Positions 30,294 to 62,112 of a stretch of DNA of 64,000 bases are shown in pieces; position 1 is the stretch's first letter, and each line of letters starts with the position of its first letter. A model generated the notes under the pieces. That model was not told the origin of the DNA. It worked only from the letters and a program-made list of their open reading frames with translations, and made no database searches. The stretch lies in the IMG/VR virus record IMGVR_UViG_3300044797_000098, positions 310,001 through 374,000 of that record; one strand, given 5' to 3'. Both the position numbers and the translations under genes were made by a program.

Positions 30294-30300
30294 TTTAGCC

Positions 30301-31881
30301 TCAATTTATCACTTTCGCTAATTCGAGTTTGATGAACTCTGTCATTGTTGAATATAAAAACTCTGTGAATGTTTCCATATTGACTGTTCTCGATGTGTTT
30401 GCTGACACAATCGCTTTAACATTTGCTAATACTCTTGGGAACGCCTTTCTTCTATTCATCATAAGGTCCATTAAGTATCTTCTGTAATAAGATTTACTAT
30501 CAGTAAATCCTTTACTATCTGTTTGCGGAATGTTTGTTAACATATGTAAAACTATGTTTTCACATAACGGCGTGAATGGTGTATTCATTCGTATATTTTT
30601 AATTGTTTTTTGTATTTCATCATCAACAATAAGATTACCATCATAGATATCTTCCATCTTTTTAGCGAAAAACAATGGAAGACCTACACGAAAACTTTTA
30701 ACATTTCGTTCGATTTCCTCTTTATTATTATTGAGAAAATAAAACACATTTAGATCGTGTCGTGATTTTAGCGGTGTGTCCTGATATGACCAATCTCTAT
30801 TAGATATTTGATCTCTAATTTTTTCTGGTGGTGAATAGATATGTCTTATCTTATTACCGAGTTCTGGTGCATAATACACCGGAAGTTTTGTTCTTGATTG
30901 AAGCGATTTTGTGAAAATCGTGCATACTTCTTTATCATATTCAGGATACATTTTATCGATTAAAATACACGGTGATTTTTCATCTGCATCGATTGCATAT
31001 CTAACAACACAACGACGGATCATCTTGGTTCCAAGATTAGAATAACTTGGGTGATCTTCTGATTTAACTCCTGATGTGAGGTAAATAATACCAACGAACC
31101 TCGATAGGATCGATCCTACAAGGCAACGAGGATATTCACCATCCCATCGCTGACAAGACTTTATTCCTCGCATTGACATTGTTGCAATATCCCAAGCGCC
31201 TTCTTTTCCTTCGGAAGAGAATATAACACTATACTCTTTGTTTGGCATATTTTCTTTGCTGAAAACTTTGAACTGCGTTGTTTGTTCGAGATTTATGAAT
31301 GGTATTCCAAAAGCACCACATTTATCCTTTATTGCATTCATTATGCGCAATAATGGCTCTCCCTTACGGAAAACATTCTTGCCTTTATCATCGACAATAT
31401 CACCAATTAATTTCAATACGATTTTACCATCAGCCGAAACGACTGAACCATTTATGACATTGCCATCATACGGATCCATATATGTATGAAGTCGTTTCAT
31501 AATATCAGAAAATAAGTATAAATCATTCATTCTGATTTTATTTGTTGCTCTATCTTCTTTTGAATATAGATACTGTATAGTATCAGCCATATTAAATGAT
31601 GCGTCTCTTGCTTGGGCAACCGCATCAGCCATTATTGCCATCAGATTAAATACATAACTTCCTTCTTTTTTAACATTTTCAAAAGGCTTATCGATTATTG
31701 TTTTATCAATAAAATTAGGAAGCCCAACATTACGGAAAACTTTTTTGACCTTTGTTGGATTTTTAAATAATGTATGCTCTTTTAGAAACGGTGGAATGTT
31801 TTTATCCTTAAAAAGATCTGTTGAAAGAATAACTTTACTGTCTGTGGTTTCAGACTTTTTAATTTTTGCTTCGTCTTTCAT
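30301..31881 (-). CDS. Large uncharacterised protein, family F copy 4
   Basis: EGAWDIATMSMRGIKSCQRW core. Confidence 0.85.
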   Translation of the reverse strand: MKDEAKIKKSETTDSKVILSTDLFKDKNIPPFLKEHTLFKNPTKVKKVFRNVGLPNFIDKTIIDKPFENVKKEGSYVFNLMAIMADAVAQARDASFNMADTIQYLYSKEDRATNKIRMNDLYLFSDIMKRLHTYMDPYDGNVINGSVVSADGKIVLKLIGDIVDDKGKNVFRKGEPLLRIMNAIKDKCGAFGIPFINLEQTTQFKVFSKENMPNKEYSVIFSSEGKEGAWDIATMSMRGIKSCQRWDGEYPRCLVGSILSRFVGIIYLTSGVKSEDHPSYSNLGTKMIRRCVVRYAIDADEKSPCILIDKMYPEYDKEVCTIFTKSLQSRTKLPVYYAPELGNKIRHIYSPPEKIRDQISNRDWSYQDTPLKSRHDLNVFYFLNNNKEEIERNVKSFRVGLPLFFAKKMEDIYDGNLIVDDEIQKTIKNIRMNTPFTPLCENIVLHMLTNIPQTDSKGFTDSKSYYRRYLMDLMMNRRKAFPRVLANVKAIVSANTSRTVNMETFTEFLYSTMTEFIKLELAKVIN

Positions 31882-31904
31882 TTGTCAAGTTTCTCCGATT
31901 ACTA

Positions 31905-33452
31905 CTATATTTTAGCCACTGTTTGATCGTTAGTCAAGTCGTTAGATTTATTAGTTAATAACTCTTTTAATTGCAATTTTATACCAGTCGATATTTGGTT
32001 ATGAGCTGGTTCAAGCAGTTTAGTAAGAATTGCAGAATTAATTCTTTCGTTTTTATTTAAATTGAAGTATTTGTTTATACGCTTAACAAAAGATTGTATA
32101 ACTTTTTTGTTATATTTTTTTGATAGAAAAGAAAAACATAACTGTTTATAGTAATCTGATGAACTATCGAATGTATTTTTGGATACTTCTTTTATTATCG
32201 TATCAGCAATAGAATTAAAATACTCGTCAGTCAGATATTTCATATCATTACAAACAATTATTTTTTGCAATGATTTTTTAATCTTATCGTTTTTTGATAT
32301 GCAAGATATATCTGAATTAAAACTAATTGGTTTGGAATGAGATCTAATTGCATTACGAAGTCTGGTTTCTCTATTTTTTAGATTTGTTTTGAGAGGTGGT
32401 TCTTTAATAGGCAATTTTGTAGCAACCATAGTATCCATATATGATTTTGTGCGTTCTGGAAGACTTTCTCTAATTTTATTAGGTGGAAGATATAGATTTT
32501 TAATCTGGATATAAGTATTATTATACGGATAGGCTACGACTCGTATTTTGTTATTTGTTTTATTTTCTATGAATGCCCTGAATGATTCCATCACTTTACC
32601 ATCATATTCAGGATACATTTTATCAATGAGAATAATCGGTTTTTGAGTTTGAGAATCAATTGTATATCTAACAACTGACCTTCTTATCATTTTTGATCCA
32701 AGACCATCAACATCTTTTCCTGATGTTAAATATATTATACCAACACAAGGATCAATAAGTGAGCCAACTAATTGTGTCTTAAATCTTCCACCCCAACTTT
32801 GACAAGACTTTATTCCACGCATAGACATTGTTGCAATGTCCCATAACCCTTCATTGCCATTTGATGAAAAAACTATTTGATAGTTTTTCATTGGAACATT
32901 ATCGGTGCTAAATCGTTTAAAATCTTTCATTTCTTCGAGTTTTGGAAGCACTTTACCTATGTGCAATGATTTAATTTCATTATATATTTTATTATATACT
33001 TTAAATATGCTTTCGTTTTCTCTGAAAACAATTTTGCCTTGTTGATCGAGAACATCATATGTCAATTTTATCGTTATTTTACCATCATCTGATGTTTTAA
33101 CAAAACTGGATATGTTATAGGTATCTGGCATTCTTTCAACAACATATCTCCAATAATTAAGTCTATTGATTTTTTCGATTGTTTTAGGGTTTTTATTATG
33201 ATTTTTATTTTCTAAAACATACGACTTGGCTCTAATCTTATTAGAAAGAATATAATATATTGACCAAAATAAATTATTACCAGCCTCTTTTGCAATGTCA
33301 GAATTGTCGAACTTACAAGTTTCGGAACAATTAAATAATCCTATTGATGGAAAAACTTTACTTACTTTTGTCAATGATGTAAGTTTTTTATGACTTACAA
33401 GAAACTTCGGAAGTTTTTCATTTTTTAGAAACTCTTGAATGTTAGTCCGCAT
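31905..33452 (-). CDS. Large uncharacterised protein, family F copy 3
   Basis: EGLWDIATMSMRGIKSCQSW core. Confidence 0.85.
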   Translation of the reverse strand: MRTNIQEFLKNEKLPKFLVSHKKLTSLTKVSKVFPSIGLFNCSETCKFDNSDIAKEAGNNLFWSIYYILSNKIRAKSYVLENKNHNKNPKTIEKINRLNYWRYVVERMPDTYNISSFVKTSDDGKITIKLTYDVLDQQGKIVFRENESIFKVYNKIYNEIKSLHIGKVLPKLEEMKDFKRFSTDNVPMKNYQIVFSSNGNEGLWDIATMSMRGIKSCQSWGGRFKTQLVGSLIDPCVGIIYLTSGKDVDGLGSKMIRRSVVRYTIDSQTQKPIILIDKMYPEYDGKVMESFRAFIENKTNNKIRVVAYPYNNTYIQIKNLYLPPNKIRESLPERTKSYMDTMVATKLPIKEPPLKTNLKNRETRLRNAIRSHSKPISFNSDISCISKNDKIKKSLQKIIVCNDMKYLTDEYFNSIADTIIKEVSKNTFDSSSDYYKQLCFSFLSKKYNKKVIQSFVKRINKYFNLNKNERINSAILTKLLEPAHNQISTGIKLQLKELLTNKSNDLTNDQTVAKI

Positions 33453-33460
33453 ATTATGAC

Positions 33461-35053
33461 CTATGGAAGTGGCAAGGGTTCGATTTTCATTTCGTTTCTT
33501 TTATCAACTACTTTTTTCAACTCTTCTTTTATTTCTTTTTCCATCAATGGGAAAACACTTTGCATCAATGGCACGAAGTTTCTTATACCGAAACGATGTC
33601 CTGCTTTTAGATACAACTCACCGTTTAGTTTTTTAATCAGTTCATTCTTTGACGAATGAATGGCTTTATTTCTATGATTGAAAAAACTATAATATACACG
33701 ACGAATATAAGTATCAGAATTAGTAAATTGTGTCTTATCAACATTATCAATTATTTGTTTGGCAAGACTACTACCGATAGCATTCAATGTATGATCATAT
33801 GAATAGTATCTATTTTTATTTGGAAGAATAAGCAATTTCATTGCTGGCTTTATTGTTCTTGGAACTTTTTCTATATCTATTTTTTTAATAGCATCAACAA
33901 ATGCTTTTGAAAAGATTTTTATGAACTTATTCTCTTTTTTCCTGCTATTTTTGTCGAATAAGACTGCTTGTTTGTCTTTTTTATTGCCAGATTGATTTTT
34001 AATTTTACAATCCTGATATGACTGAATCGATTCATATTCATCATACGGACGAGATTTACCTTCCCTGCTGGTGTCTTTTAGTTTCTTTCTAATTGGATTT
34101 AGTGGAAGATATGACTCTTGTAATAATTTGTAATCCATATTTTCAGCATAAAAAACATCGAACTTGTTATTGGTTTTTGTTTCTATAAACTTTTTAAATT
34201 GAGCAATAACTTTATTATCGCCCGATGGATACATTCTGTCGATTAGAATATACGGTTTATGGTTTTTACCATCAATAACGAACCTAACAACGCATCGCCG
34301 AACCATTTTACTACCATATTCATTAAACTTACCATTGGTCGTCATATAAATTATGCCAACGAATGGATCTATGACTGAACCTATTGTGCAATACTTGTAT
34401 TCTCCTCTATCCCAACTTTGGCAGGAAGATATACCACGCATTGACATAGTGCCAATATCCCAAGCACCTTCTGCACCATCGGATGAAAATACTATTTTGA
34501 ACCCATTATTCGGAATGTTGTCCGTGCTAAATGCTTTAAACGAATAAGCGTTCTCCAACGGATCTAATCCAGCAACATTTGCCTCTTGAAGCATTTCGCT
34601 TAATTTATTATATACTCGGAATAGACTTTCATTCTTTCTGAAAACTGGTCTATTATCGCCTTCTATTGTTATGTTGTCGGATAGTTTTAATGAAACTCGA
34701 CCGTTATTAACTTGAATAATATCGTTGGATTTTTTTAATTGATTGAAAACTGCTTGAAGCAGGGTGGAACAATTTTCTGTTTTTTCTTTATTGACTTTGT
34801 TTTTTATTGTCTTTTTATGCCTATTAAGTAATGTAATGCTGTATGATATTATAGCATTAATATCACCAATCAAAATACCAGCAGATTGCTTTGCTTGATC
34901 TATATTATCTACATTCGCATCCTCAATACAATTAGGAAGTCCTATTGACGGAAAGACTTTTTTGATCGTCTTTACTTCCTTGAAAATGGGATGAGACGAA
35001 AACCATTTAGGATATTTTTTGTCTTTAAAGATTTCTTTTATTGGTGTTGCCAT
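33461..35053 (-). CDS. Large uncharacterised protein, family F copy 2
   Basis: EGAWDIGTMSMRGISSCQSW core. Confidence 0.85.
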   Translation of the reverse strand: MATPIKEIFKDKKYPKWFSSHPIFKEVKTIKKVFPSIGLPNCIEDANVDNIDQAKQSAGILIGDINAIISYSITLLNRHKKTIKNKVNKEKTENCSTLLQAVFNQLKKSNDIIQVNNGRVSLKLSDNITIEGDNRPVFRKNESLFRVYNKLSEMLQEANVAGLDPLENAYSFKAFSTDNIPNNGFKIVFSSDGAEGAWDIGTMSMRGISSCQSWDRGEYKYCTIGSVIDPFVGIIYMTTNGKFNEYGSKMVRRCVVRFVIDGKNHKPYILIDRMYPSGDNKVIAQFKKFIETKTNNKFDVFYAENMDYKLLQESYLPLNPIRKKLKDTSREGKSRPYDEYESIQSYQDCKIKNQSGNKKDKQAVLFDKNSRKKENKFIKIFSKAFVDAIKKIDIEKVPRTIKPAMKLLILPNKNRYYSYDHTLNAIGSSLAKQIIDNVDKTQFTNSDTYIRRVYYSFFNHRNKAIHSSKNELIKKLNGELYLKAGHRFGIRNFVPLMQSVFPLMEKEIKEELKKVVDKRNEMKIEPLPLP

Positions 35054-35060
35054 TATGATC

Positions 35061-36464
35061 TCATAGGTATTTAGAATAGATTTTTGCGTATTTTGACTTC
35101 GGTGATTTCGGTTTCTTTGAAAGTTTTGCTAACTCTTTATTTATAATTGGAATTACTTTCTTTGATGCTTCTGATACGATTTTTTTTCTTATATTTTCAG
35201 TCTTTTTTGAAGGTGAAAAAAAACCATACCATACATCACTCATATGGTTGTTTATGGCTTTCTTTACATCTTCCACATCAGATTTAAATTCTGGTTTGGT
35301 TATATACCGCGGATTATCATTCCACAATCTTAAATCATCTAAAACATTAACATAATCGACATCTTTATTTTTTACATCTCTAATAACATTTTTATATTCT
35401 TCGGGAACATCTGCGAGTTTTAATTTTTTCACACACGATATAAAACTTTTTGCTACTGCATTATCAATTCGATCTGATATTTTTTCCAATTCTCTACCGG
35501 TCCTATCATCATAAGTTTCATCATCAGTTTCATCATCATAATCGATCTCATTATCGCGATATGATCTGCAATCGTAATCTAAATTGCTAACTACTTCGCT
35601 TGTCGGTATAACAACATTGGAACGCAACCCATTTTTTAAATCGATTATATCGAACTTGTTTTTAGTTTTTTCTTTTAGAAAAGTAATGAACTCTTTCATT
35701 ACGGCTTTATTATATTCAGGATACATAGTATCTATAACAATGCTTGGTTCTTTGCTTCGTTCTTTTACAACGAACCTAACAATACATCGACGAAGCATCT
35801 TGCTACCATAATCTGTTTTTGTGCCAGAGGTTAGATATATAATACCAGTGAATGGATCGACAATTGATCCGACTAATTTACCACAATACTCCTTACCCCA
35901 GCCCTGACACGAAGATATACCACGCATTGACATCGTAGCAATATCCCATAGTCCTTCCATACCATCGGAAGAAAAACGAACTGTATGTTTAGCGTTTGGT
36001 ATATTTATTGAACTGAATTGCTTAAAAGCACTAATGTTTTCTAACGCTGGAAGATATGATTGGTATTGTTTATGTAATTTATTATATACTTTGAATACAC
36101 CCTCGCCTTGTTTGAACACAATTTTTTTATCTTTATCCGCAATAGGTTTTGTGAGATTGAGGGATATTTTACCATCTTTTTTTACAACCGATTTAACAAG
36201 AGTATTAGATAGATTGCTTATCAATGTATAGTCTTGTTTATAAATAGGAATATAATTATGTAATGCACAACTCATATTTTCAACTAAATTTAACGCAGTT
36301 TCCTTTATTTCTTCTGTGTTATCTATGCTTACAACTTTTTCACAATTAGGAAGTCCAATATCTGGGAAGATTTTCCTTACAACTTTTACTGTTTTGAATA
36401 TAGGATGTTGTCTTATGAAGACAGGAAAATCTTTTTTAGCGAATATCTGTTTTACTGTTGGCAT
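35061..36464 (-). CDS. Large uncharacterised protein, family F copy 1
   Basis: EGLWDIATMSMRGISSCQGW core. Confidence 0.85.
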   Translation of the reverse strand: MPTVKQIFAKKDFPVFIRQHPIFKTVKVVRKIFPDIGLPNCEKVVSIDNTEEIKETALNLVENMSCALHNYIPIYKQDYTLISNLSNTLVKSVVKKDGKISLNLTKPIADKDKKIVFKQGEGVFKVYNKLHKQYQSYLPALENISAFKQFSSINIPNAKHTVRFSSDGMEGLWDIATMSMRGISSCQGWGKEYCGKLVGSIVDPFTGIIYLTSGTKTDYGSKMLRRCIVRFVVKERSKEPSIVIDTMYPEYNKAVMKEFITFLKEKTKNKFDIIDLKNGLRSNVVIPTSEVVSNLDYDCRSYRDNEIDYDDETDDETYDDRTGRELEKISDRIDNAVAKSFISCVKKLKLADVPEEYKNVIRDVKNKDVDYVNVLDDLRLWNDNPRYITKPEFKSDVEDVKKAINNHMSDVWYGFFSPSKKTENIRKKIVSEASKKVIPIINKELAKLSKKPKSPKSKYAKIYSKYL

Positions 36465-50735: not shown

Positions 50736-51545
50736 ATGAGCCATTATGTATATATATTGCAAAATAAAATTAACTTGAAGATTTATGTCGGATATTCCGC
50801 AAATCCAAAAATAAGATGGAATAGTCATAAAAACACCGCGAATAACCCAAAACATAAAAATCATCACGAACTAATATATAATGCAATACGCAAACACGGT
50901 TGGGAAAATTTTGACAAACAAATTATTGAAGAATGGGAAACTAAAAAAGAAGCGCTAGAAGCAGAGATGTTTTGGATAGAATTTTTTCGAACCAATATTC
51001 ATATTTATGGAAAAGAATATGGGTATAATCTTGGCCCAGGTGGAACTGGCGGTCGCGTAAAAGGTGGAAAACTTTCTATTGAACATAGGCGCAAATTAAG
51101 TGAAGCGCATAAAGGAAGAACCGCGTGGAATAAAGGGAAACCGTCCCCACTAAAAGGTCGAAAAAGAACAACACCGCTTACTGAAAATGAAAAACAAAAC
51201 CTTGCAAGACTTGCTGATTTTCATAGAGGTAGAAAACATTCACCAGAACGAATAGAAAAATCAAGACAATCACGCTTAGGAAAGAAAACAAAACCACATA
51301 CGGAAGAACATAAGCGCAAAATAAGTGAGGCTCAAAAAGGAAAAAAGAAACCAAAACACATATTTTCAGAAATAATTGAAAAACAAATTGTTCAAGAATA
51401 TAAATCTGGTAAATCTATAAATAAATTAAAAATTGAATATAAATGTAGTTGGACTGCAATCAAATCAATATTACTTATGTATATAGCGGAAAACGATATA
51501 AGAAAAGATGATGGTAAAAAAACGAGAAAAATTATTCGAAAATAA
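50736..51545 (+). CDS. GIY-YIG homing endonuclease with NUMOD3 repeats
   Basis: YVYILQN..N.KIYVG, GYN, HRRKLSEAHKG repeats. Confidence 0.9.
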   Translation: MSHYVYILQNKINLKIYVGYSANPKIRWNSHKNTANNPKHKNHHELIYNAIRKHGWENFDKQIIEEWETKKEALEAEMFWIEFFRTNIHIYGKEYGYNLGPGGTGGRVKGGKLSIEHRRKLSEAHKGRTAWNKGKPSPLKGRKRTTPLTENEKQNLARLADFHRGRKHSPERIEKSRQSRLGKKTKPHTEEHKRKISEAQKGKKKPKHIFSEIIEKQIVQEYKSGKSINKLKIEYKCSWTAIKSILLMYIAENDIRKDDGKKTRKIIRK

Positions 51546-51888
51546 CTCAACCATTGAGCAAAAAATAATAAACGATTATCTTTCTGGAAAGAGCATAAAC
51601 TATATATCAAAAATATATAAATGTTCTTGGAATGTTGTAAATAGAATAATAAAAGACGCAATAAATAATAATCTAATTATTTATAAAAAAATACGAGGCG
51701 GGGCACAGTCTAAATTGACTGAACATGATGTGTATCAAATACTAATTGAATATAATTCAACCGAAATATCACAAGAAAAACTTGCTAAAAAATATAATAT
51801 TGAAAGAAGCACTGTAAGAAATATAGTAAATGGAAAAACATGGAAAGATATTTATCTCAAATATGTTAGTGCCACCAAGACAACCTAA
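51508..51888 (+). CDS. HTH-module protein, probably the frameshifted 3' part of the GIY-YIG gene
   Basis: Repeats the Y.SGKSIN..YKCSW module; overlap spans an A7 run. Confidence 0.65.
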   Translation: MMVKKREKLFENNSTIEQKIINDYLSGKSINYISKIYKCSWNVVNRIIKDAINNNLIIYKKIRGGAQSKLTEHDVYQILIEYNSTEISQEKLAKKYNIERSTVRNIVNGKTWKDIYLKYVSATKTT

Positions 51889-52185: not shown

Positions 52186-52419
52186 TTATGCTTTTCTCCA
52201 ATCATAACTTTGATCTGGTAATCTCGTGTATTTTACCTTATTCCAATAACCTAACATATTAGGGTTATCAATCTCCCACTCCTCAATTGAGACAATTCTA
52301 TCACCATTATTCAGTAGATGCTTATCTCCTGCTTGTTTTGCATCATCAAGTGATTGATGAACACTAAGCATGTCATCACATTCGCCATTGCCATGGAATA
52401 ATATAAATACACTATTCAT
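52186..52419 (-). CDS. Small hypothetical protein, paralog of 52416-52667
   Basis: MNS.F...GNG...SLD.A...GD..L....I.EW. Confidence 0.65.
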   Translation of the reverse strand: MNSVFILFHGNGECDDMLSVHQSLDDAKQAGDKHLLNNGDRIVSIEEWEIDNPNMLGYWNKVKYTRLPDQSYDWRKA

Positions 52420-52667
52420 TTTGATATGATTTCTCCAAGTGTAAAAGATGGTTCTGATTTTACCCATTCTCCACCAACAACCTTCCCCCAACTCACATTA
52501 TATCTCACCGCCCCAATATACCATTCAAAAATATTTACATATTTTGATTCCCATCCAGCCAACAATATTTCATCACCATATTTCATAGCCTCATCCAATG
52601 AATAAAAACAAGGCGTATTATTACCCATATAACCATTGCCCGGAACAACTTGAAAGATACTATTCAT
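52416..52667 (-). CDS. Small hypothetical protein, paralog of 52186-52419
   Basis: Same motif pattern. Confidence 0.65.
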   Translation of the reverse strand: MNSIFQVVPGNGYMGNNTPCFYSLDEAMKYGDEILLAGWESKYVNIFEWYIGAVRYNVSWGKVVGGEWVKSEPSFTLGEIISK

Positions 52668-52836
52668 TTTTCATCTCATCCTTTACCCATTCAATCAATT
52701 CTATAATAAAATTACACTTACCATTATTCTCGTGATCGTAATCTGACATTGAGGTAATATAAGGATCGCCAGCGTTTTGAATTGAACGAAGTTCTTCTTG
52801 TAAATGTTCAAGTAATTTTTGCTGGAATGTTATCAT
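52660..52836 (-). CDS. 58-aa hypothetical protein (not in track)
   Basis: MITFQQKL...VKDEMKNE; coupled on both sides. Confidence 0.55.
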   Translation of the reverse strand: MITFQQKLLEHLQEELRSIQNAGDPYITSMSDYDHENNGKCNFIIELIEWVKDEMKNE

Positions 52837-53098
52837 TGTAATATCAATAACTCATTATGTCTTTCACAAACTGCCATCGCTTCTTCTTTTGTGTCAAACT
52901 TACAATCATCTGGCGTGCTATTGCCAAAAATAGTAATATCACTTGTACGAAGATTTTTGGTCAGAAAACGAATATTACCATTATTGACAATATATTATAA
53001 TATAATTCATTTTTTACGGAAGCAACGGAATACTTATATGGCACAAACCAAGTTTCATTCCATTTATGTTGATGCTTACCTCCATATACCCATTCCAT
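52833..53098 (-). pseudogene. Family E member with an internal frameshift
   Basis: MEWVY...; conserved tail CKFDTKEEAMAVCERHNELLILQ lies in another frame; length 266 nt. Confidence 0.7.
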
Positions 53099-53106
53099 AA
53101 TAAATC

Positions 53107-53400
53107 CTATTGCAAAACCAGTCGTTGATTATATCTTTCACAAGCTACCATTGCTTTTTCTTTTGTGGCAAACTTATGATCTGGTCGAAGACCATTGTTA
53201 TTTAGTAATGTTGTAGATACTGAACTTTTATTTAGCCAATGTATTTCGATATCGTCGATATGATTTTGACAAACCATAGTGCACCACCAACCGTTATTTT
53301 CTACACCTTGATACATCACACTGTAAGTATAGGATCCTTCGCGAGCAACAAAATAATGCAAATAACAATTATTCTCTTTTGCTATTGACCATTCTAACAT
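53107..53400 (-). CDS. Family E small protein
   Basis: MLEW...FATKEKAMVACERYNQRLVLQ. Confidence 0.8.
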   Translation of the reverse strand: MLEWSIAKENNCYLHYFVAREGSYTYSVMYQGVENNGWWCTMVCQNHIDDIEIHWLNKSSVSTTLLNNNGLRPDHKFATKEKAMVACERYNQRLVLQ

Positions 53401-53409
53401 ATCATCTCC

Positions 53410-53691
53410 TTATTGTAATATCAATAACTCATAATGTCTTTCACAAACGGCTTTTGCTTCTTCTGGCATCTTGAAAAAACAATCATCTGGCAAACTATCA
53501 ACCCTACTTGTAATACAATGCATATGAAGTCTGTTTGACACATATCCGCCCAAACTTTTTGGCGGAGTATAAACTATATACCACCCACTTTTACTATATT
53601 GTAAATACACAATGTCATACCATCCACGATCTGTATTTGATATGTATCGGTCATCACCACTCAATGCATCACTATCATTTTCCCATTCCAT
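53410..53691 (-). CDS. Family E small protein
   Basis: MEW...EEAKAVCERHYELLILQ. Confidence 0.8.
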   Translation of the reverse strand: MEWENDSDALSGDDRYISNTDRGWYDIVYLQYSKSGWYIVYTPPKSLGGYVSNRLHMHCITSRVDSLPDDCFFKMPEEAKAVCERHYELLILQ

Positions 53692-53699
53692 AATAAATC

Positions 53700-53987
53700 C
53701 TATTGAAGAATAAGCAGTCTATAATGTCTTTCACAAACTGCCATTGCTTCTTCTTTTGTAGCAAACTTATGTTCTTCTTGAATACCAGTGTTAGTATGTA
53801 AATCCGTTTTTATACTCTTTGTTATGTATAAACCGATCTTAGTGGAATTATAATCTGAAAAGAAAATAGAACACCAGCAATCTACACCTACGATATTTTT
53901 GCGAAACAAAATAACCTTATAAGATATATCACCTATATGTGATATATAATCATCTGGATGTCGAGTTCCCTGTTTTATCCAGTTCAT
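53700..53987 (-). CDS. Family E small protein
   Basis: MNW...FATKEEAMAVCERHYRLLILQ. Confidence 0.8.
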   Translation of the reverse strand: MNWIKQGTRHPDDYISHIGDISYKVILFRKNIVGVDCWCSIFFSDYNSTKIGLYITKSIKTDLHTNTGIQEEHKFATKEEAMAVCERHYRLLILQ

Positions 53988-54259
53988 TGTAAAATCAATA
54001 ACCTATAATGTCTTTCGGCGATTGCCATTGCTTCTTCTTTTGTCGCAAAAATAAGTCCAACTGAATTTGCTTGAATGGTATTTGTTCTTCTGGCTTTTAG
54101 ATTTTTAGATATAAATTTACCCATACTTCGAGGCGAATTAGTATGATATCTTATTACCCAGCCGTTATAGGTTCTTCCGTGAAATTCTACATCGTAGCAA
54201 TGAAAATTATCAACTGTTAGACACCAATGATCGAAGGTAGAAAACTGTTCCCAATTCAT
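53984..54259 (-). CDS. Family E small protein
   Basis: Start MNWEQ; FATKEEAMAIAERHYRLLILQ. Confidence 0.8.
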   Translation of the reverse strand: MNWEQFSTFDHWCLTVDNFHCYDVEFHGRTYNGWVIRYHTNSPRSMGKFISKNLKARRTNTIQANSVGLIFATKEEAMAIAERHYRLLILQ

Positions 54260-54522
54260 TGTAAAATCAATAATTTGTGATGGCGTTCGCATATCTCTTG
54301 CGCTTCTTCTTTCGTGGCGAACTCACAATTAGATTGTAGTCCTTGTGCTTCTGCTATTCCATAACCGCATTCTATGTTAAGATTATTAGATAGGAAGCCA
54401 CCAAGCATATCTGGTGGATTATATGATGAACACCACTTGCCATAATAACTGATCACACAATAATCATTTCCATCATCAAGATGAGCTTCCCAATAACCTA
54501 TATCAGTTTCTAACCAATTCAT
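54256..54522 (-). CDS. Family E small protein
   Basis: MNW...FATKEEAQEICERHHKLLILQ. Confidence 0.8.
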   Translation of the reverse strand: MNWLETDIGYWEAHLDDGNDYCVISYYGKWCSSYNPPDMLGGFLSNNLNIECGYGIAEAQGLQSNCEFATKEEAQEICERHHKLLILQ

Positions 54523-54532
54523 TTTATAAACC

Positions 54533-54796
54533 TTATTGTAAAATCAATAATTTGTAATGTCTTTCAGCAGCGCTGATTGCTTCTTCTTTCGTATGAAACT
54601 TATGTTCATCCAAAAAATGACCATAATTTGTGCTCAATGGCTTTGAGTTTTTGTCAAGCCAGTTTATTGGTAATCCGTTTCCATCTGAATATAAAACGCT
54701 CCAAGTCATATTTGATTGTAAGTAAATTACATTATATCTGTAATCACTTCCTATTGCAAGAAACTCTTTGCTTTCTATTTGTTTCCATTCTAACAT
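54533..54796 (-). CDS. Family E small protein
   Basis: MLEW...FHTKEEAISAAERHYKLLILQ. Confidence 0.8.
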   Translation of the reverse strand: MLEWKQIESKEFLAIGSDYRYNVIYLQSNMTWSVLYSDGNGLPINWLDKNSKPLSTNYGHFLDEHKFHTKEEAISAAERHYKLLILQ

Positions 54797-55047
54797 AGGA
54801 TTAGTAATTTGTGATATCGCTCACAAACCTCCATTGCTTCTTCTTTTGTTTTGAATTGACATTCTGGTAAGTTTGTAATCATTCTTCTGTTTTCTTCCAT
54901 TATATGTAAGTTTTTAGGTATCCATGCTCCACTTGGTTCTCTTCGTAAGGCTCCCCAACAACCTACAATATATGAAGCACTATATCTATGTAAGCCATCT
55001 ATATTAGCAGTTATAGTATAGGGTGATATAATCTTCCATTCCAACAT
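54790..55047 (-). CDS. Family E small protein
   Basis: MLEW...FKTKEEAMEVCERYHKLLILC. Confidence 0.8.
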   Translation of the reverse strand: MLEWKIISPYTITANIDGLHRYSASYIVGCWGALRREPSGAWIPKNLHIMEENRRMITNLPECQFKTKEEAMEVCERYHKLLILC

Positions 55048-55054
55048 ATGAATC

Positions 55055-55336
55055 CTACTGCAAAATCAGTAATCTATAATGTCGTTCTACAACTATTATC
55101 GCTTCTTCTTTTGTAGCAAAAAGATGCTTCGATGATATCAAGCCATCATTATAATCCAAGTCTATCGCCAATGAGTTTTTAGTTAACCATAATGATTTAT
55201 TGAACCTATTTCCATCTGTAATATTTACACACCAACAATTCTCTTGTTTTGAAAATCCTACTAAATACCTTATATTACCTGCTTGCGCAATAATTTCGCC
55301 ATATTTATTTGTTTCTATATTTCTCCATTTTAACAT
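55055..55336 (-). CDS. Family E small protein
   Basis: MLKW...FATKEEAIIVVERHYRLLILQ. Confidence 0.8.
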   Translation of the reverse strand: MLKWRNIETNKYGEIIAQAGNIRYLVGFSKQENCWCVNITDGNRFNKSLWLTKNSLAIDLDYNDGLISSKHLFATKEEAIIVVERHYRLLILQ

Positions 55337-55345
55337 ATTATGAAC

Positions 55346-55612
55346 CTATTGCAACAATAATAATTTGTAATGTCGCTCACAAACCTTCATGGCTTCTTCT
55401 TTTGTGGGAAACTTGCAATTATCTTTCAATTTATCGCCGTAATAAGATTCTATGCGAAGATTGCTTGATAGATAGCCAGCATACCTATTTAGATTTGGAG
55501 TATAATTAGCAACCCAGATATTATTTTTATCTTTCTCAAAAACTCTATAATTATGATCGATATCTGTGAATGGATGAGCGTAAAAATATGTAGGCTTGGA
55601 TTTCCATTCCAT
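55346..55612 (-). CDS. Family E small protein
   Basis: MEW...FPTKEEAMKVCERHYKLLLLQ. Confidence 0.8.
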   Translation of the reverse strand: MEWKSKPTYFYAHPFTDIDHNYRVFEKDKNNIWVANYTPNLNRYAGYLSSNLRIESYYGDKLKDNCKFPTKEEAMKVCERHYKLLLLQ

Positions 55613-55623
55613 GTGTTAGAATC

Positions 55624-55893
55624 CTATTGCAACAATAATAATTTGTAATGTCTCTCGCATATTGCGAACGCTTCTTCTTTTGTAGAAAATCGGCAATTTG
55701 TCGGCACACCATATCCATAATAACTTTCTAATTTCAACTTATTTGATAAGTATCTTCTTATTTTATTGTTCTCGGAATATTCTGAACTCCAAGGTATATT
55801 ATTGCCGGATGCGTAAGATACCCGATAAAATCTGTTATCGATATATGCTATGAATATTTCGTCCCCATTGCCATATGGATCAAACTTCAACAT
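55624..55893 (-). CDS. Family E small protein
   Basis: MLKF...FSTKEEAFAICERHYKLLLLQ. Confidence 0.8.
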   Translation of the reverse strand: MLKFDPYGNGDEIFIAYIDNRFYRVSYASGNNIPWSSEYSENNKIRRYLSNKLKLESYYGYGVPTNCRFSTKEEAFAICERHYKLLLLQ

Positions 55894-55967
55894 TGTATTA
55901 GAAACCTATACACTGTGCGGTGGGAAGACGGGCTTTCATAATTTTTACTGCGTCGGGGTTAGTAGTG

Positions 55968-55996
55968 AATATAAGGATGGGTGGGGCGGTTGTCAA
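55968..55996 (-). promoter_or_regulatory. Sigma70-type promoter heading the family E array
   Basis: TTGACA-17 bp-TATATT. Confidence 0.75.
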
Positions 55997-57582: not shown

Positions 57583-57610
57583 AATAATTACTATTTTATA
57601 AAATCTCTCC

Positions 57611-57979
57611 CTACGATATCTTCGCTAAATCTTCAACACTCACATACATCTCAATCGCATTCTTTGCGCCTTTGATTAGATCACGCGATATCTTTTCATC
57701 TATTGCATACGAAAGATCTATCATGTATTTTTCAGTCAATCTCCAACCACCATCATTTTCTTTGCTAAACTCATACATAACTTCTTCTTCGGTAGGATCT
57801 CTTCGCAACCACCAACACCAACGACTGTTCATCCGCTTCTTCAATGATGCCCTAATCTTATCCATCGTCTCTTTATATCGTGTTTCTTTTCTTGCTTTCG
57901 CCCAAGCAAGATATTTTTCCGCAACATGAACAACTTCCTTCGGATCCATCTTCACGAGCGATTGATTTGGACAAGTCAT
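57611..57979 (-). CDS. Hypothetical protein
   Basis: GAGG RBS before MTCPN. Confidence 0.65.
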   Translation of the reverse strand: MTCPNQSLVKMDPKEVVHVAEKYLAWAKARKETRYKETMDKIRASLKKRMNSRWCWWLRRDPTEEEVMYEFSKENDGGWRLTEKYMIDLSYAIDEKISRDLIKGAKNAIEMYVSVEDLAKIS

Positions 57980-58110
57980 TTTATTTTCCTCGCAATTTTT
58001 CTCTGATGAAACGGTTCCGTTATCGTTATCCAAAATCCTATTCCACAAAATACCATTGATACAAAAAACCAAGTATTGACAATACTCATTAATATTGTAT
58101 ATATCATAAT

Positions 58111-59930: not shown

Positions 59931-60952
59931 GGTATAGCGTTCAATCTTTCAACAACTTCAATTAATACCTCTTTTTCCACCGCAAGATTTATCCTAACCT
60001 TACTCGCATCACCAAAACCTTCTCCATCTGCCACATTGATTTTAGCGTGTTGCAACTTTTGATATTCTTTCCCTTTTCTAAACCAACCAAACATCCCCGG
60101 AATATCAACAATATCTTCCGGCACATCAAGAATATCTTTACGAATAGATTTGATGATTGTCTTGTTTTCAATCAATCCTTCTTGGCATCGTTGAATGAAT
60201 ATATCGTATGTCTCTTTTTGTTCAAGATCGGTTAGCAATTCGAGAACAATACTTTGACTAACTGTCGATACACCGACTGTCATCATTTCCATATATTCTT
60301 GGATATCGTGGTGGAATTGTTCATTACTACAAACCGTATAACCAATCCTTAAACCTGACAAACCTAAAAACTTACTCATTGAATAAATCTGAACATCACC
60401 CAATGCAGGGAAGTCCTTATATGTCGGAAGATAGATTGGGTTGTAATACACCGCGTCATGTATGAATGGAACATTGTTGTCCTTGTGCCATTCAACAAGC
60501 GTTTTTATTCGTTCGGGACAATCGAACATATTACCACACGGATTACCCGGAAGCACTGCAAGATATGCATCATAAGATCGATCCACTGTTTCAAGACCGT
60601 GTGCTTTTAGCAACGGAGGAATTAATGGCCAAACTGGTCTCGTCAATGCTACTCGTTTTTTATTCATTTTATTGAGCGCATATGCCACTGCCCCAAGTGC
60701 ATTCTTCGCCCCATTTGTAATTACGACTGGTGCCTGATGCTTATCTTCCAAAAACTTTACAAGCGGTGGATATCCTGTTGGTGGCTGATATTCACATTTG
60801 TTATTTGAGTATAAATCAACGCTCAACTGATTTTGAGATCGATATAGGTCGAGCGTTGTTAGCAATGCATTACGAACAATATGAGCCTCGCCCACTGACA
60901 AGTCAATAAAACCCTCACCTAATTTTGGAATTGCAAGTAATAAATTACTCAT
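59927..60952 (-). CDS. PLP-dependent aminotransferase class I/II
   Basis: PGNPCG, IHDAVY, SMSK.LGLSGLRIGY, G..FG....VRI. Confidence 0.9.
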   Translation of the reverse strand: MSNLLLAIPKLGEGFIDLSVGEAHIVRNALLTTLDLYRSQNQLSVDLYSNNKCEYQPPTGYPPLVKFLEDKHQAPVVITNGAKNALGAVAYALNKMNKKRVALTRPVWPLIPPLLKAHGLETVDRSYDAYLAVLPGNPCGNMFDCPERIKTLVEWHKDNNVPFIHDAVYYNPIYLPTYKDFPALGDVQIYSMSKFLGLSGLRIGYTVCSNEQFHHDIQEYMEMMTVGVSTVSQSIVLELLTDLEQKETYDIFIQRCQEGLIENKTIIKSIRKDILDVPEDIVDIPGMFGWFRKGKEYQKLQHAKINVADGEGFGDASKVRINLAVEKEVLIEVVERLNAIP

Positions 60953-61233
60953 ATTAGCACCAAGTATTTTTCCATTTCTTTATCATACTTACCGTTCGTG
61001 CATCTACTAACGACACCATATAAATGATGTATTTGTTTTCTATCAATGCCATTGGTCATTCCTCGAACTAAATTACGAGCAACATCCAATCCCTTTTCCT
61101 CATATATTAAAACCGTTGCTTCCCAATAATTACTTGCCATTATGGTCTCGGTAAAATCATCATCAACGATTGTAATATAATATGTCTTATTTGATCCAAG
61201 TGGAGTGTATTTCCAATCATATGATTTTAACAT
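60949..61233 (-). CDS. Small protein, family B, tag EKYLVLI
   Basis: IVDDDFTE..YWEA..YEEKGLDVARNL. Confidence 0.8.
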   Translation of the reverse strand: MLKSYDWKYTPLGSNKTYYITIVDDDFTETIMASNYWEATVLIYEEKGLDVARNLVRGMTNGIDRKQIHHLYGVVSRCTNGKYDKEMEKYLVLI

Positions 61234-61535
61234 AACAACATATACTTTTCTATTTCTTTGTCGTATTTCCCGTTTGATTTTGCCATCATAAAATCATAGT
61301 ATTCCGTTTTAGACCATGCTTTGTTACAGAGTTCCATAACAATCTTATATGTCAATACCAAGTTCTTTGCAACATTCAAGTTTCGTTTTTCATATTCTTG
61401 TATTACCGCTTCCCAATAACTATTAGCGCGAACCAAGGCACAAAAATCAGTATCAGTTATTTCAAAACTGAACCTATACTTATCTGGCATAGGAGGGATT
61501 TCACGATCGTCGAGTAATCTAATTGATTTTAGCAT
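61227..61535 (-). CDS. Small protein, family B, tag EKYMLLC
   Basis: ITDTDF..YWEA..EYEKRNLNVAKNL. Confidence 0.8.
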   Translation of the reverse strand: MLKSIRLLDDREIPPMPDKYRFSFEITDTDFCALVRANSYWEAVIQEYEKRNLNVAKNLVLTYKIVMELCNKAWSKTEYYDFMMAKSNGKYDKEIEKYMLLC

Positions 61536-61825
61536 TATAGCAACATCAAGTATTTTTCGATTTCTTCATCATATATACCGCCAGTAAATTGACTGGCAAG
61601 TTTCCTGTTGTCATTAGACGAACCTTTACTGATCCATTTAATGGCACGCGCTAGATTAGCAGCAATGTTCAGGTTTCTTTTTCCATATTCTAAAACTAAC
61701 GCTTCCCACAAATTATTGGCAATCGTTGTCTCGGTAAAATCAGTATCAATAATAGTAATCATGATTGTCTTACCACCATTTACATATCTATTAGGATTAT
61801 AGTCCCAAGTTATAGATTTGAACAT
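61535..61825 (-). CDS. Small protein, family B, tag EKYLMLL
   Basis: IIDTDFTE..LWEA..EYGKRNLNIAANL. Confidence 0.8.
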   Translation of the reverse strand: MFKSITWDYNPNRYVNGGKTIMITIIDTDFTETTIANNLWEALVLEYGKRNLNIAANLARAIKWISKGSSNDNRKLASQFTGGIYDEEIEKYLMLL

Positions 61826-62112
61826 TATAGCAACATCATATATTTTTGGAGTTCGTCTTTGTATGGTTCAACGCTTGGTATATTATGAATAATATGATTA
61901 TATAAATCCGCAGTAGTTATATTGGGATTACTCCAATTAATAATGGCGCGTGCTAAGTTTTTGGCAACATTAAGATTTCGTTTTTTATACTCTATAACTA
62001 TCGTATCCCATACTGTGTGGGAGTCCGATTTTACTTCGAAGTCATCATCAGTAATAATCCATTCTTTCAAACCAGTGGATGTATTTTCTCTTAGGCTGCA
62101 TTTGATATACAT
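61825..62112 (-). CDS. Small protein, family B, tag QKYMMLL
   Basis: ITDDDFE..VWD..EYKKRNLNVAKNL. Confidence 0.8.
   Translation of the reverse strand: MYIKCSLRENTSTGLKEWIITDDDFEVKSDSHTVWDTIVIEYKKRNLNVAKNLARAIINWSNPNITTADLYNHIIHNIPSVEPYKDELQKYMMLL

What the first reader, a model, noticed from the sequence alone, without database searches (positions are those of the whole stretch)
52833..55996. Eleven-gene cassette-like array with hypervariable bodies and a conserved 20-aa tail
Seen: one consensus promoter drives 11 paralogs of 85-97 aa (the last one frameshifted). Only M(L)(E/N/K)W, a central Y.V..., (F/Y/W)L.(K/N)N(L/S) and the tail F.TKEEA...CERHY.LL.LQ-stop are kept. The ~60-bp tail DNA is similar between copies, and the stop is often fused to the next RBS (CAA-TAG-GAT-T). 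Variation includes indels and all four bases. Inference: a repertoire of specificity variants on one small fold, expanded and reshuffled by recombination between the conserved tails. It would suit a panel of receptor-, defence- or partner-specific inhibitors.
Basis: partly seen in the sequence, partly recalled or inferred. Interest (0 to 1): 0.7.

Follow-up and report, generated by a model that had tools for sequence, protein, structure and literature searches.

The report
Shuffled small-protein cassette array in jumbo phage
An uncultured 406-kb peat phage carries a row of eleven old, diverged copies of one small, undescribed protein, and related phages hold different selections of the same copies swapped at the shared tail; this looks like a kit of binding proteins, but its function is untested.

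Summary
On the minus strand, 55893 to 52833, lie 10 intact genes (85-97 aa) and one broken gene of a single family. One near-consensus sigma-70-type promoter precedes them. Spacers run from a 7-nt overlap to 11 nt.

- **Family:** phage-only and unnamed, with no Pfam, PHROG, NCBIfam, PADLOC or PDB match. There are 46 representatives among 1.84 billion proteins. It occurs as tandem arrays wherever it could be inspected (2 to 11 copies).
- **Structure:** an AlphaFold model (pLDDT 92) gives a six-stranded sheet plus a C-terminal helix, and that helix is the conserved tail. Conservation alternates along the strands, which fits one conserved sheet face under the helix and one variable open face.
- **Age and selection:** the copies share only 31-56% identity with their nearest copy in the array. 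Nine of eleven have a closer relative in another phage, up to 99%. Most orthologous pairs give dN/dS of 0.07-0.4. The bodies are therefore not hypervariable, and the array is not a recent amplification.
- **Shuffling:** related phages carry different subsets and orders. Breakpoints cluster inside the tail or at its end, and cassette blocks are 95-97% identical on a 66-84% backbone. Reshuffling through the tails is supported.
- **Function:** a panel of inhibitors or binders is plausible but untested. No RNA run was listed.

The parts
55968..55996 (-). Sigma-70-type promoter TTGACA-17 nt-TATATT in front of the array
   Evidence: It matches 11 of 12 positions. The pattern occurs 3 times in the window, all on the coding strand, against 0.12 expected. 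The -35 hexamer and the G+C-rich spacer are kept in L010 and L018.
55898..55960 (-). 3' remnant of an N6/N4 DNA methyltransferase gene (last ~20 codons plus stop) between the promoter and c1
   Evidence: It aligns with the end of the full-length methyltransferase gene that directly precedes the array in L011, L009 and L020. Searches identify that gene as Pfam N6_N4_Mtase.
55624..55893 (-). c1, 89 aa
   Evidence: It has a 90% ortholog in L009.
55346..55612 (-). c2, 88 aa (the copy that was modelled)
   Evidence: It has a 69-70% ortholog in L011 and L012.
55055..55336 (-). c3, 93 aa
   Evidence: It has a 69% ortholog in L009.
54790..55047 (-). c4, 85 aa; ends in C rather than Q, and its last codons overlap the c5 start
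54533..54796 (-). c5, 87 aa
   Evidence: It is 76% identical to P0013 from an 83.5-kb contig.
54256..54522 (-). c6, 88 aa, acidic (pI 4.3)
   Evidence: It has a 99% ortholog in L011 and a 94% ortholog in L018.
53984..54259 (-). c7, 91 aa; its start overlaps the c6 stop (ATGA)
   Evidence: It has a 77% ortholog in L009. It is absent from the L011-type phage (joint 53701>54258).
53700..53987 (-). c8, 95 aa
   Evidence: It is absent from the L011-type phage.
53410..53691 (-). c9, 93 aa, acidic (pI 4.8)
   Evidence: It has a 96% ortholog in L011.
53107..53400 (-). c10, 97 aa; the most divergent tail (..ERYNQRLVLQ)
   Evidence: It has 97-98% orthologs in L011 and L018.
52833..53098 (-). c11, a pseudogene. 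A 7-nt deletion (one unit of a tandem 7-mer, beside window position 52988) shifts the frame after codon 37. The tail survives in another frame.
   Evidence: (7 letters 'put in behind 52988' in runs X3 and X16). The intact 90-aa ortholog is at L011 7144-7416.
52186..52836 (-). Three further small genes on the same strand with no gap (58, 83 and about 78 aa). They are not family members and probably belong to the same transcription unit. Two of them belong to a second small paralog family.
   Evidence: One search reports no terminator-like hairpin between c11 and these genes; its one minus-strand hairpin inside the array lies in the c8 tail.

Best explanation
What it is. This is a tandem, co-directional array of old paralogs of one undescribed, phage-only small protein. 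It sits in a plastic region of an uncultured jumbo phage from peat (about 406 kb, 33% G+C).

Shown:
- The conserved 20-aa tail is the protein's C-terminal helix.
- Along the strands, conserved residues alternate with highly variable ones.
- Each copy is kept by purifying selection.
- The family was found in tandem arrays at every locus that could be inspected.
- Related phages hold different subsets and orders of the same cassette types.
- Exchange points fall inside the tail-coding DNA or at its very end.

Inferred from these:
- The alternation means that one sheet face packs under the helix and the opposite face and the loops form a variable surface.
- The unit that moves is the 3' end of the preceding tail, plus the spacer or start overlap, plus the body, plus the 5' part of the cassette's own tail.

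How it most likely works (inferred). The tail plays two parts. As protein it is the core helix of the fold. As DNA it supplies 14-29-nt stretches of identity between otherwise unalignable genes. Homologous or microhomology-driven recombination can act on these, and the phage encodes a RecA/UvsX-like protein. Such events would delete, insert and reorder whole cassettes in frame, and would pass cassettes between co-infecting relatives. The last tail codons also carry the ribosome-binding site or the start of the next gene. All copies are therefore probably read from one transcript by coupled translation.

Function (inferred, untested). The copies are a set of small binding proteins, each with its own target. 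The most likely targets are host takeover or anti-defence factors. A phage's complement of cassettes would then reflect the hosts and defences it meets.
For: Array and family.

Fold: (pLDDT 92.4; strands 3-57, helix 71-87).

Alternating conservation along strands. Column entropies at 21/22/23/24/25 are 3.8/0/3.8/1.0/3.4. At 32 to 38 they are 3.2/1.1/3.1/2.3/3.3/2.5/3.5.

Varied surface chemistry: pI runs from 4.3 to 9.1 among copies.

Old paralogs with closer orthologs elsewhere.

Purifying selection. dN/dS is 0.07-0.44 in 15 of 19 pairs and is raised only for c11 pairs and one c9 pair.

Different cassette sets in relatives:
- L011: c2', c6, c9, c10, c11
- L018: x8, xA, c6, c9, c10, c11', c9b
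- L010: x8, xA, c11', xB, c6b
- L009: c1, c3, c7
- L019: 3 copies
- L020: 5 copies

Distant relatives also form arrays: L024 has 9 copies at 48% G+C, and L026 has at least 5.

Breakpoints in tails:
- Three unrelated cassettes that precede c6 become near-identical from the E-R-H codons onward. There are 15 mismatches in the first 38 nt against 2 in the next 47 nt, p=6e-5.
- The xA copies of L018 and L010 differ at 5 of their last 25 nt against 3 of 245 elsewhere, p=2e-4.
- The tail end of c11 in L018 matches the window's c8 tail (51 of 60) rather than the L011 c11 tail (33 of 60), and a c9-type cassette follows it as in the window.
- In runs X3 and X16 a joint 53701>54258 removes exactly c7+c8, with 4 shared letters.

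Mosaic tail halves within the window: the c11 tail is c8-like in its 5' half (31 of 36) and c9-like in its 3' half (34 of 36).

Lateral exchange: cassette blocks are 95-97% identical on a 66-84% backbone. dS is about 0.05 for the cassettes and about 2.3 for gltX.

Recombinase.

Context: a DNA methyltransferase gene, or its remnant, lies upstream at nearly every locus where that flank could be read. In L019 a methyltransferase plus a BglII-type endonuclease gene sit there. A HARE-HTH gene is next door in the window.
Against: - There is no evidence of function. Nothing matched in Pfam, PHROGs, NCBIfam, PADLOC or PDB sequences. No fold match rose above background: the best Z was 5.8 and all Foldseek E-values were 0.02 or higher.
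- There is no evidence of expression. No RNA run was listed, and the promoter is only a consensus match.
- The surface reading rests on alternating conservation plus a predicted model, not on coordinates or a solved structure.
- The dN/dS values rest on few substitutions.
- L010 and L018 have contig names typical of long-read assemblers, and gltX is split in L018. Single-base frameshifts in them should not be trusted. The cassette order and the breakpoints do not depend on such errors.
- Within one lineage the array looks stable. The L011 type is the same in four contigs, and about 20 runs hold a similar share of the window's words. The window type is the same in two peat samples. Shuffling is therefore occasional, not a programmed switch.
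Confidence: 0.5

Rival explanations
1. The copies are sequence-specific nucleic-acid-binding proteins, a set of small regulators or DNA-end or DNA-site binders. They would use an AP2/WGR-like sheet-plus-helix fold, with the variable sheet face reading different sequences.
For: AP2 domains (2gcc, 6sy0, 7wq5), WGR domains (2cr9, 2eoc, 7s68), dsRBDs and the DNA-binding N-terminal domain of the ASFV ligase recur among the weak structural matches. In AP2 domains the sheet contacts DNA and the helix backs it (own knowledge). That arrangement matches the conserved-helix, variable-sheet pattern seen here.
Against: All these matches lie below the tool's stated background (Z 4.1-5.8; Foldseek E of 0.5 or higher). 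The Pfam AP2 and WGR profiles find nothing in the genome even at E=10. Half of the copies are acidic or neutral, with pI down to 4.3, which is unusual for DNA binders.
Confidence: 0.15
2. The copies are virion-packaged, ejected proteins like the T-even internal proteins. The conserved tail would be a shared packaging or targeting signal and the bodies would be diverse injected effectors.
For: The logic is the same as for T4 internal proteins: diverse small proteins that share only a short conserved targeting sequence, one of which is an anti-restriction inhibitor (PMC3012670). The very C-terminal L-x-L-Q is kept in 85% or more of members.
Against: In a confident model the tail is an integral helix, not a free peptide. 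The array follows a sigma-70-type promoter among small genes, DNA-methylase genes and tRNA-synthetase genes, not head genes. The terminal CAA codon is also explained by the overlap with the next gene's start or ribosome-binding site.
Confidence: 0.1
3. The copies are immunity- or antitoxin-like proteins. The stockpile would protect against varied toxins or nucleases of competing phages or bacteria, or of the phage itself.
For: One copy gives a weak Imm12 hit (E=0.054). Immunity proteins (6u08_B, 7zhm_D, 8owu_B), the RecA inhibitor PsiB and an Imm61 cluster are among the weak fold matches. Arrays of diverse immunity genes are known in bacteria (own knowledge). In L019 a restriction endonuclease gene lies directly upstream.
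Against: All matches are at noise level. No toxin partner genes sit within or beside the arrays. This reading overlaps with the best explanation, since both describe specific small binders.
Confidence: 0.1
4. The array is functionless duplicated filler DNA in a large genome, drifting neutrally.
For: One copy is broken. Copy number varies freely from 2 to 11. Jumbo phages tolerate arrays of duplicated genes (PMC13282480).
Against: Ten of eleven frames are open. Orthologs show dN/dS well below 1. The core residues and the tail are kept across phages with 32-48% G+C. The translational coupling signals are kept at every junction.
Confidence: 0.05

Closest known systems
Hyperplastic regions of T4-type phages shuffled through PeSL cassettes (Arbiol et al. 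2010, PMC2839356; Comeau et al. 2014, PMC4122927)
   Same: Small, non-essential genes of unknown function sit in a plastic region. Insertions, deletions and replacements between close relatives are mediated by recombination between short conserved sequences that flank each gene.
   Different: PeSLs are intergenic promoter-plus-terminator stem-loops. Here the repeated sequence is the coding 3' end of each gene. There is one promoter for the whole array, no conserved hairpin, and all the genes are paralogs of one family.
Internal-protein (IP) loci of T-even phages with a conserved capsid targeting sequence (PMC3012670)
   Same: A polymorphic set of small, diverse proteins shares only a short conserved terminal segment. 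At least one of them (IPI*) is a specific inhibitor of a host restriction enzyme.
   Different: In the IP proteins the conserved segment is N-terminal, cleaved off, and serves packaging. Here it is a C-terminal structural helix, and there is no sign of packaging or of a head-gene context.
Arrays of many similar genes in jumbo phages (review PMC13282480, section 'Jumbo phage evolution')
   Same: Tandem arrays of homologous genes in genomes over 200 kb.
   Different: [quoted passage not shown] Here the copies are 27-56% identical and old, each has orthologs elsewhere, and they are exchanged as cassettes.
Orphan toxin/immunity cassettes of CDI and Rhs loci, and silent pilin cassettes (own knowledge, not tested here)
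   Same: Variable modules are bounded by a short conserved coding segment that serves as the recombination site for swapping modules.
   Different: Those are silent or partial cassettes that are moved into one expression site. Here every cassette is a complete gene with its own start, and all are probably expressed together.
Poxvirus 'gene accordions' (own knowledge)
   Same: Copy number of a host-interaction gene changes by recombination in a tandem array.
   Different: Accordions are recent, near-identical amplifications. These copies are ancient and diverged.

Membership tests
Tandem paralog arrays of jumbo phages | Several homologous genes head to tail on one strand in a phage genome over 200 kb | tested here: met
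   Eleven profile matches lie in a row and nowhere else in the 406-kb record.
PeSL mobile regulatory cassettes (T4-type) | A sigma-70-like early promoter plus a terminator stem-loop between the shuffled genes | tested here: not met
   Spacers run from a 7-nt overlap to 11 nt. The one strong promoter lies upstream only. The consensus fold of the 11 tails plus spacers is -1.8 kcal/mol.
T-even internal proteins | An N-terminal capsid targeting sequence of about 10 aa that is removed by the prohead protease | tested here: not met
   At the N-terminus only M-(L)-E-W is shared. The conserved segment is C-terminal and forms part of the fold.
T-even internal proteins | Presence in the virion | not testable with these tools
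   No proteome exists for this uncultured phage.
Diversity-generating retroelement targets | A reverse transcriptase and a template repeat, with adenine-specific variation | tested here: not met
   The RVT_1 profile finds nothing in the genome. Differences involve all four bases and indels.
Gene accordion (recent amplification) | Near-identical copies whose closest relatives lie within the same array | tested here: not met
   The best paralog within the array is 31-56% identical. The best relative elsewhere is 69-99% identical for nine copies.
AP2 / WGR nucleic-acid-binding domains | A match to the family profile, or a structural match above background | tested here: not met
   The Pfam AP2 and WGR profiles give no match at E=10. 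Structural Z is 4.1-4.8, below the tool's stated background of 7-8.
Known defence or anti-defence protein families | A profile match | tested here: inconclusive
   PADLOC gives one stray hit in 54 members. Pfam, PHROGs and NCBIfam give nothing. No dedicated anti-defence library was available.

The most novel reading that the evidence does not exclude
The array is a phage-borne cassette library. One compact scaffold (a sheet with a variable open face, clamped by an invariant helix) has diversified into dozens of specificities that neutralise different host defences or takeover targets. The invariant helix's coding sequence doubles as the in-frame recombination site and as the translational coupling element. 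Co-infecting jumbo phages can therefore trade whole, ready-to-express inhibitors, in a recombinase-independent analogue of an integron built into a gene family.
Probability: 0.3. Interest if true: 0.7.

Novelty: new variant of a known kind. Interest (0 to 1): 0.45.

Why it matters
If the copies are specific inhibitors or binders, this one family offers more than 40 natural variants of a single 90-residue scaffold. Their variable surface is mapped, and each is short enough to synthesise and screen against laboratory defence-system libraries.

The locus also shows, with breakpoints resolved to a few tens of bases, how a conserved coding segment can act as the exchange point for whole genes. That extends the picture drawn from T4-type PeSL cassettes to uncultured jumbo phages.

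If the function proves mundane, it remains a clean example of birth-and-death and cassette exchange in a phage gene family.

Tried and rejected
- **Profile libraries.** Pfam, PHROGs, NCBIfam and PADLOC were run on all copies and on 54 family members. Only stray sub-threshold hits came up.
- **PDB by sequence profile.** Only antibody-like noise.
- **Fold searches** (PDB Foldseek, BFVD, VIA wide, AFDB clusters, ESM Atlas). The best matches are uncharacterised phage proteins. Named matches (AP2, WGR, DUF1508, immunity proteins, PsiB) are all at background level.
- **Homodimer prediction for c2.** No verdict (score 0.12). It is not evidence either way.
- **Cultured phages.** No DNA match and no credible protein match among 50,697 phage records.
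- **Cellular genomes.** No relative among the GTDB species representatives.
- **RNA evidence.** No RNA run was listed.
- **DGR.** No reverse transcriptase.
- **A conserved RNA hairpin or terminator in the tails.** None.
- **Strong gene-conversion homogenisation of the tails.** Rejected. Third-position identity is 0.57 and the excess of identical codons is modest.
- **Kinship with the second small array at 60949-62112,** which also has a conserved hydrophobic C-terminal tail. Rejected (hhalign probability 0.2%).
- **P0043,** a 714-aa repeat protein that matches only the F-x-T-K-E-E-A motif. Set aside as not a family member.
- **A Cys/His metal site** (C or H at position 66, C78, H81). Noticed but not universal, since c3, c5 and c7 lack C78. 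Left as an idea.


Full report
**1. The observation**

From 55893 down to 52833 there are ten intact ORFs of 85-97 aa and an eleventh that is broken. All eleven match one profile, and the 406,470-bp virus record that holds the window has no other copy. That record is rated 95% complete, and the window is its bases 310001-374000.

The promoter at 55996-55968 (TTGACA, 17 nt, TATATT) matches 11 of 12 positions. The pattern TTGACA-N17-TATAWT occurs three times in the window, always on the coding strand and always as TATATT, against 0.12 expected.

At every junction one of two things is true. Either the stop is fused to a Shine-Dalgarno-like sequence (CAA-TAG-GAT, CAA-TAA-GG), or it overlaps the next start (CAATGA; in c4/c5 the start lies inside the last codons).

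The eleventh copy lacks one unit of a 7-nt tandem repeat that is present in the intact 90-aa ortholog of a related phage.

The array is not an assembly artefact. One 42.9-kb contig spans it at even depth. A second peat sample gives identical pieces across the c10/c9, c9/c8, c8/c7 and c7/c6 junctions and across the c11 deletion.

**2. What the protein is**

No library names it. Pfam, PHROGs, NCBIfam, PADLOC and PDB sequences give nothing credible.

An exhaustive profile search of 1.84 billion representative proteins finds only 46 representatives. All those traced come from metagenomic, phage-like contigs. Nothing was found in 50,697 phage records or in the GTDB species genomes.

An AlphaFold2 model built on a 54-sequence alignment is confident (pLDDT 92.4). 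It has six strands between residues 3 and 57 and a helix at 71-87. The conserved tail is therefore the C-terminal helix of the fold.

Column entropies alternate along the strands. Y22, V24, W33, A35 and Y37 are conserved, while residues 21, 23, 25, 32, 34, 36 and 38 are among the most variable in the family. I read this as one sheet face packed under the helix and the opposite face, with the loops, free to vary.

The copies range from pI 4.3 to 9.1.

Structural searches give only background-level matches. The best Z is 5.8 where the tool states 7-8 as typical background, and all Foldseek E-values are 0.02 or higher. AP2, WGR, DUF1508, immunity proteins and PsiB are among them. The Pfam AP2 and WGR profiles find nothing in the genome.

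**3. Old paralogs, individually conserved**

Within the array, the nearest paralog of each copy is only 31-56% identical. Nine of the eleven copies have a much closer relative in another phage:
- c6 99%, c10 98%, c9 96%, c1 90%
- c7 77%, c5 76%, c2 70%, c3 69%
- the surviving part of c11 100%

c4 has only a 57% partial match elsewhere, and c8 has none closer than its paralogs (41%).

Orthologous pairs give dN/dS of 0.07-0.44 in 15 of 19 comparisons. Values are higher only for c11, whose tail has been swapped and which is broken in the window, and for one c9 pair with nine substitutions.

So the bodies are not hypervariable, and the array is not a recent amplification. It is a collection of long-diverged types, each under purifying selection.

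The genome has no reverse transcriptase, so a diversity-generating retroelement is excluded.

**4. The array differs between relatives, and the joints lie in the tails**

The locus is syntenic in related contigs. It lies downstream of an N6/N4 DNA methyltransferase gene, or a remnant of one, and upstream of a glutamyl-tRNA-synthetase-like gene.

The content differs from contig to contig:
- The window has c1 to c11.
- L011 has c2', c6, c9, c10 and an intact c11. The same array is seen in L013, L015 and L016.
- L018 has x8, xA, c6, c9, c10, c11' and a second c9-like copy.
- L010 has x8, xA, c11', xB and a c6-like copy.
- L009 begins c1, c3, c7.
- L019 has three copies and L020 has five.

More distant relatives are arrays too. 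L024 has nine copies at 48% G+C, and L026 has at least five.

Three junction comparisons place the exchange points:
- **Junction into c6.** Whatever cassette precedes c6 (c5 in the window, xA in L018, c2' in L011), the sequence becomes near-identical from the E-R-H codons of that cassette's tail onward. There are 15 mismatches in the first 38 nt of the tail against 2 in the next 47 nt, p=6e-5.
- **xA in two contexts.** xA is followed by c6 in L018 and by c11' in L010. The two xA genes differ at 3 of 245 positions, and then at 5 of the last 25, p=2e-4.
- **c11 in L018.** It carries a tail end that matches the window's c8 tail (51 of 60) rather than the L011 c11 tail (33 of 60). As with c8 in the window, a c9-type cassette follows it.

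In two rhizosphere runs the dominant phage (245x and 77x) has a joint from 53701 to 54258. This removes exactly c7 and c8, with four letters shared by both sides. One of these runs also holds a 2x contig with the c7/c8 junction.

Inside the window the tails are themselves mosaics. The c11 tail is c8-like in its first half (31 of 36) and c9-like in its second half (34 of 36).

Exact shared runs between tails have a median of 14 nt and reach 29 nt, against 8 and 12 nt in the bodies.

The moving unit is therefore offset from the gene. It consists of the end of the preceding tail (with the ribosome-binding site or start overlap), the body, and the first part of the cassette's own tail.

**5. Exchange between lineages**

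Between the window and L011 the syntenic backbone is 66-84% identical. Against this, c6 is 96.8% identical and the block from the c8/c9 tail through c11 and the next small genes is 94.6% identical. Synonymous divergence is about 0.05 for these cassettes and about 2.3 for the neighbouring gltX gene.

Cassette blocks have therefore moved between phages that are otherwise well diverged. The genome encodes a RecA/UvsX-like protein, which could catalyse such exchange. That it does so is an inference.

Within a lineage the array is stable. The L011 type is the same in four contigs, about 20 runs hold a similar share of the window's words, and the window type is the same in two peat samples.

**6. 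Why the tail is conserved**

Within the window, conservation is mainly at the protein level. Third-position identity in the tail is 0.57. Identical codons make up 0.62 of same-residue pairs against 0.48 expected from codon usage. Homogenisation by gene conversion is therefore weak.

There is no conserved RNA hairpin.

The terminal CAA (Gln) and the stop are also constrained by their overlap with the next gene's ribosome-binding site or start codon.

A homodimer prediction gave no verdict and is not used.

**7. Function**

Nothing here tests function. The following fit a set of small, specific binding proteins of the host-takeover or anti-defence kind:
- a sigma-70-type promoter and tight coupling between genes;
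- small size and a single fold with a variable open face;
- widely varying charge among copies;
- tandem organisation at every inspected locus, with free copy number;
- lateral exchange faster than the backbone;
- a neighbourhood of DNA methyltransferase genes, in one relative a methyltransferase plus a BglII-type endonuclease gene, and a HARE-HTH gene.

I put about 0.4-0.5 on that reading. The rivals are nucleic-acid binders, packaged or ejected proteins, immunity-like proteins, and junk. They are listed separately with the results that would decide between them. No RNA run was listed for the locus.

**8. Comparison with what is known**

The closest described mechanism is modular shuffling in the hyperplastic regions of T4-type phages through PeSL cassettes (PMC2839356, PMC4122927). 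The PeSL definition (intergenic promoter plus stem-loop) is not met here.

The closest described logic is that of the T-even internal proteins. They are diverse small proteins that share only a short conserved targeting segment, and one of them is an anti-restriction inhibitor (PMC3012670). Their defining N-terminal cleaved signal is also not met here.

Arrays of similar genes are known in jumbo phages (PMC13282480), but those are described as highly similar duplicates.

I therefore file this as a new variant of a known kind: an undescribed family whose conserved coding tail serves as the cassette exchange point.

**9. Verdict**

Interest is moderate.

Noticed in passing
window 60949-62112 (-): A second tandem array: four paralogs of about 95 aa from an unrelated family (hhalign probability 0.2%). 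It has its own conserved C-terminal tail (G-K-Y-D-K-E-I-E-K-Y-L-x-L-L). Homologs lie on both sides of the array region in L011 (2645-2950 and 9938-10222).
   Followed up: partly
window 52186-52667 (-); L010 9645-10676: A third small paralog family sits directly downstream of the array, with motifs S-L-D-D-A-K and E-W-x-I-G. It has two copies in the window and four in L010.
   Followed up: partly
window 28647-36464 (-): Five tandem ORFs of 467-548 aa on one strand have no Pfam match and look like another paralog array. Their homology to each other was not checked.
   Followed up: no
window 55898-55996 (-): The strong promoter lies just upstream of a roughly 20-codon remnant of the 3' end of a DNA methyltransferase gene. 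That gene is full-length in front of the array in L011, L009 and L020. The same promoter-plus-remnant junction is present in L010 and L018, although the L018 flank further upstream is different.
   Followed up: partly
window 50736-51888 (+): A GIY-YIG/NUMOD3 homing-endonuclease gene and an HTH gene lie on the opposite strand, between the small-gene region and gltX. They are absent from this position in L011 and L010. A related GIY-YIG gene sits between two methyltransferase genes in L019.
   Followed up: partly
window 57610-57984 (-) vs L011 4241-4615: Another isolated patch of 97% identity on a backbone of about 70%. Lateral exchange of small genes is therefore not confined to the array.
   Followed up: no
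window 18127-19356 (+): A 409-aa ORF on the opposite strand matches a transposase family (phrog_506). Genes carrying IS605 OrfB / TnpB-type domains also sit next to the array region in L010 and L020.
   Followed up: no
P0055 (212 aa) and P0043 (714 aa): P0055 is a natural fusion of two domains of this family in one polypeptide. P0043 is a repeat protein in which only the F-F-D-T-K-E-E-A-Y-E-V-I motif recurs about ten times, and it is probably unrelated.
   Followed up: no
family alignment A2, positions 66, 78, 81 of c2: Position 66 is Cys or His in most copies. C78 is kept in 76% and H81 in 93% of members, and these two lie one helical turn apart. Every window copy with C66 also has C78. This could be a metal site or a packing pair, but c3, c5 and c7 lack C78.
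   Followed up: no
L018 385-760: The first cassette (x8) of L018 shows a short head duplication and a frameshift in a T-run. gltX is also split in this contig. These may be long-read assembly errors rather than real pseudogenes.
   Followed up: no
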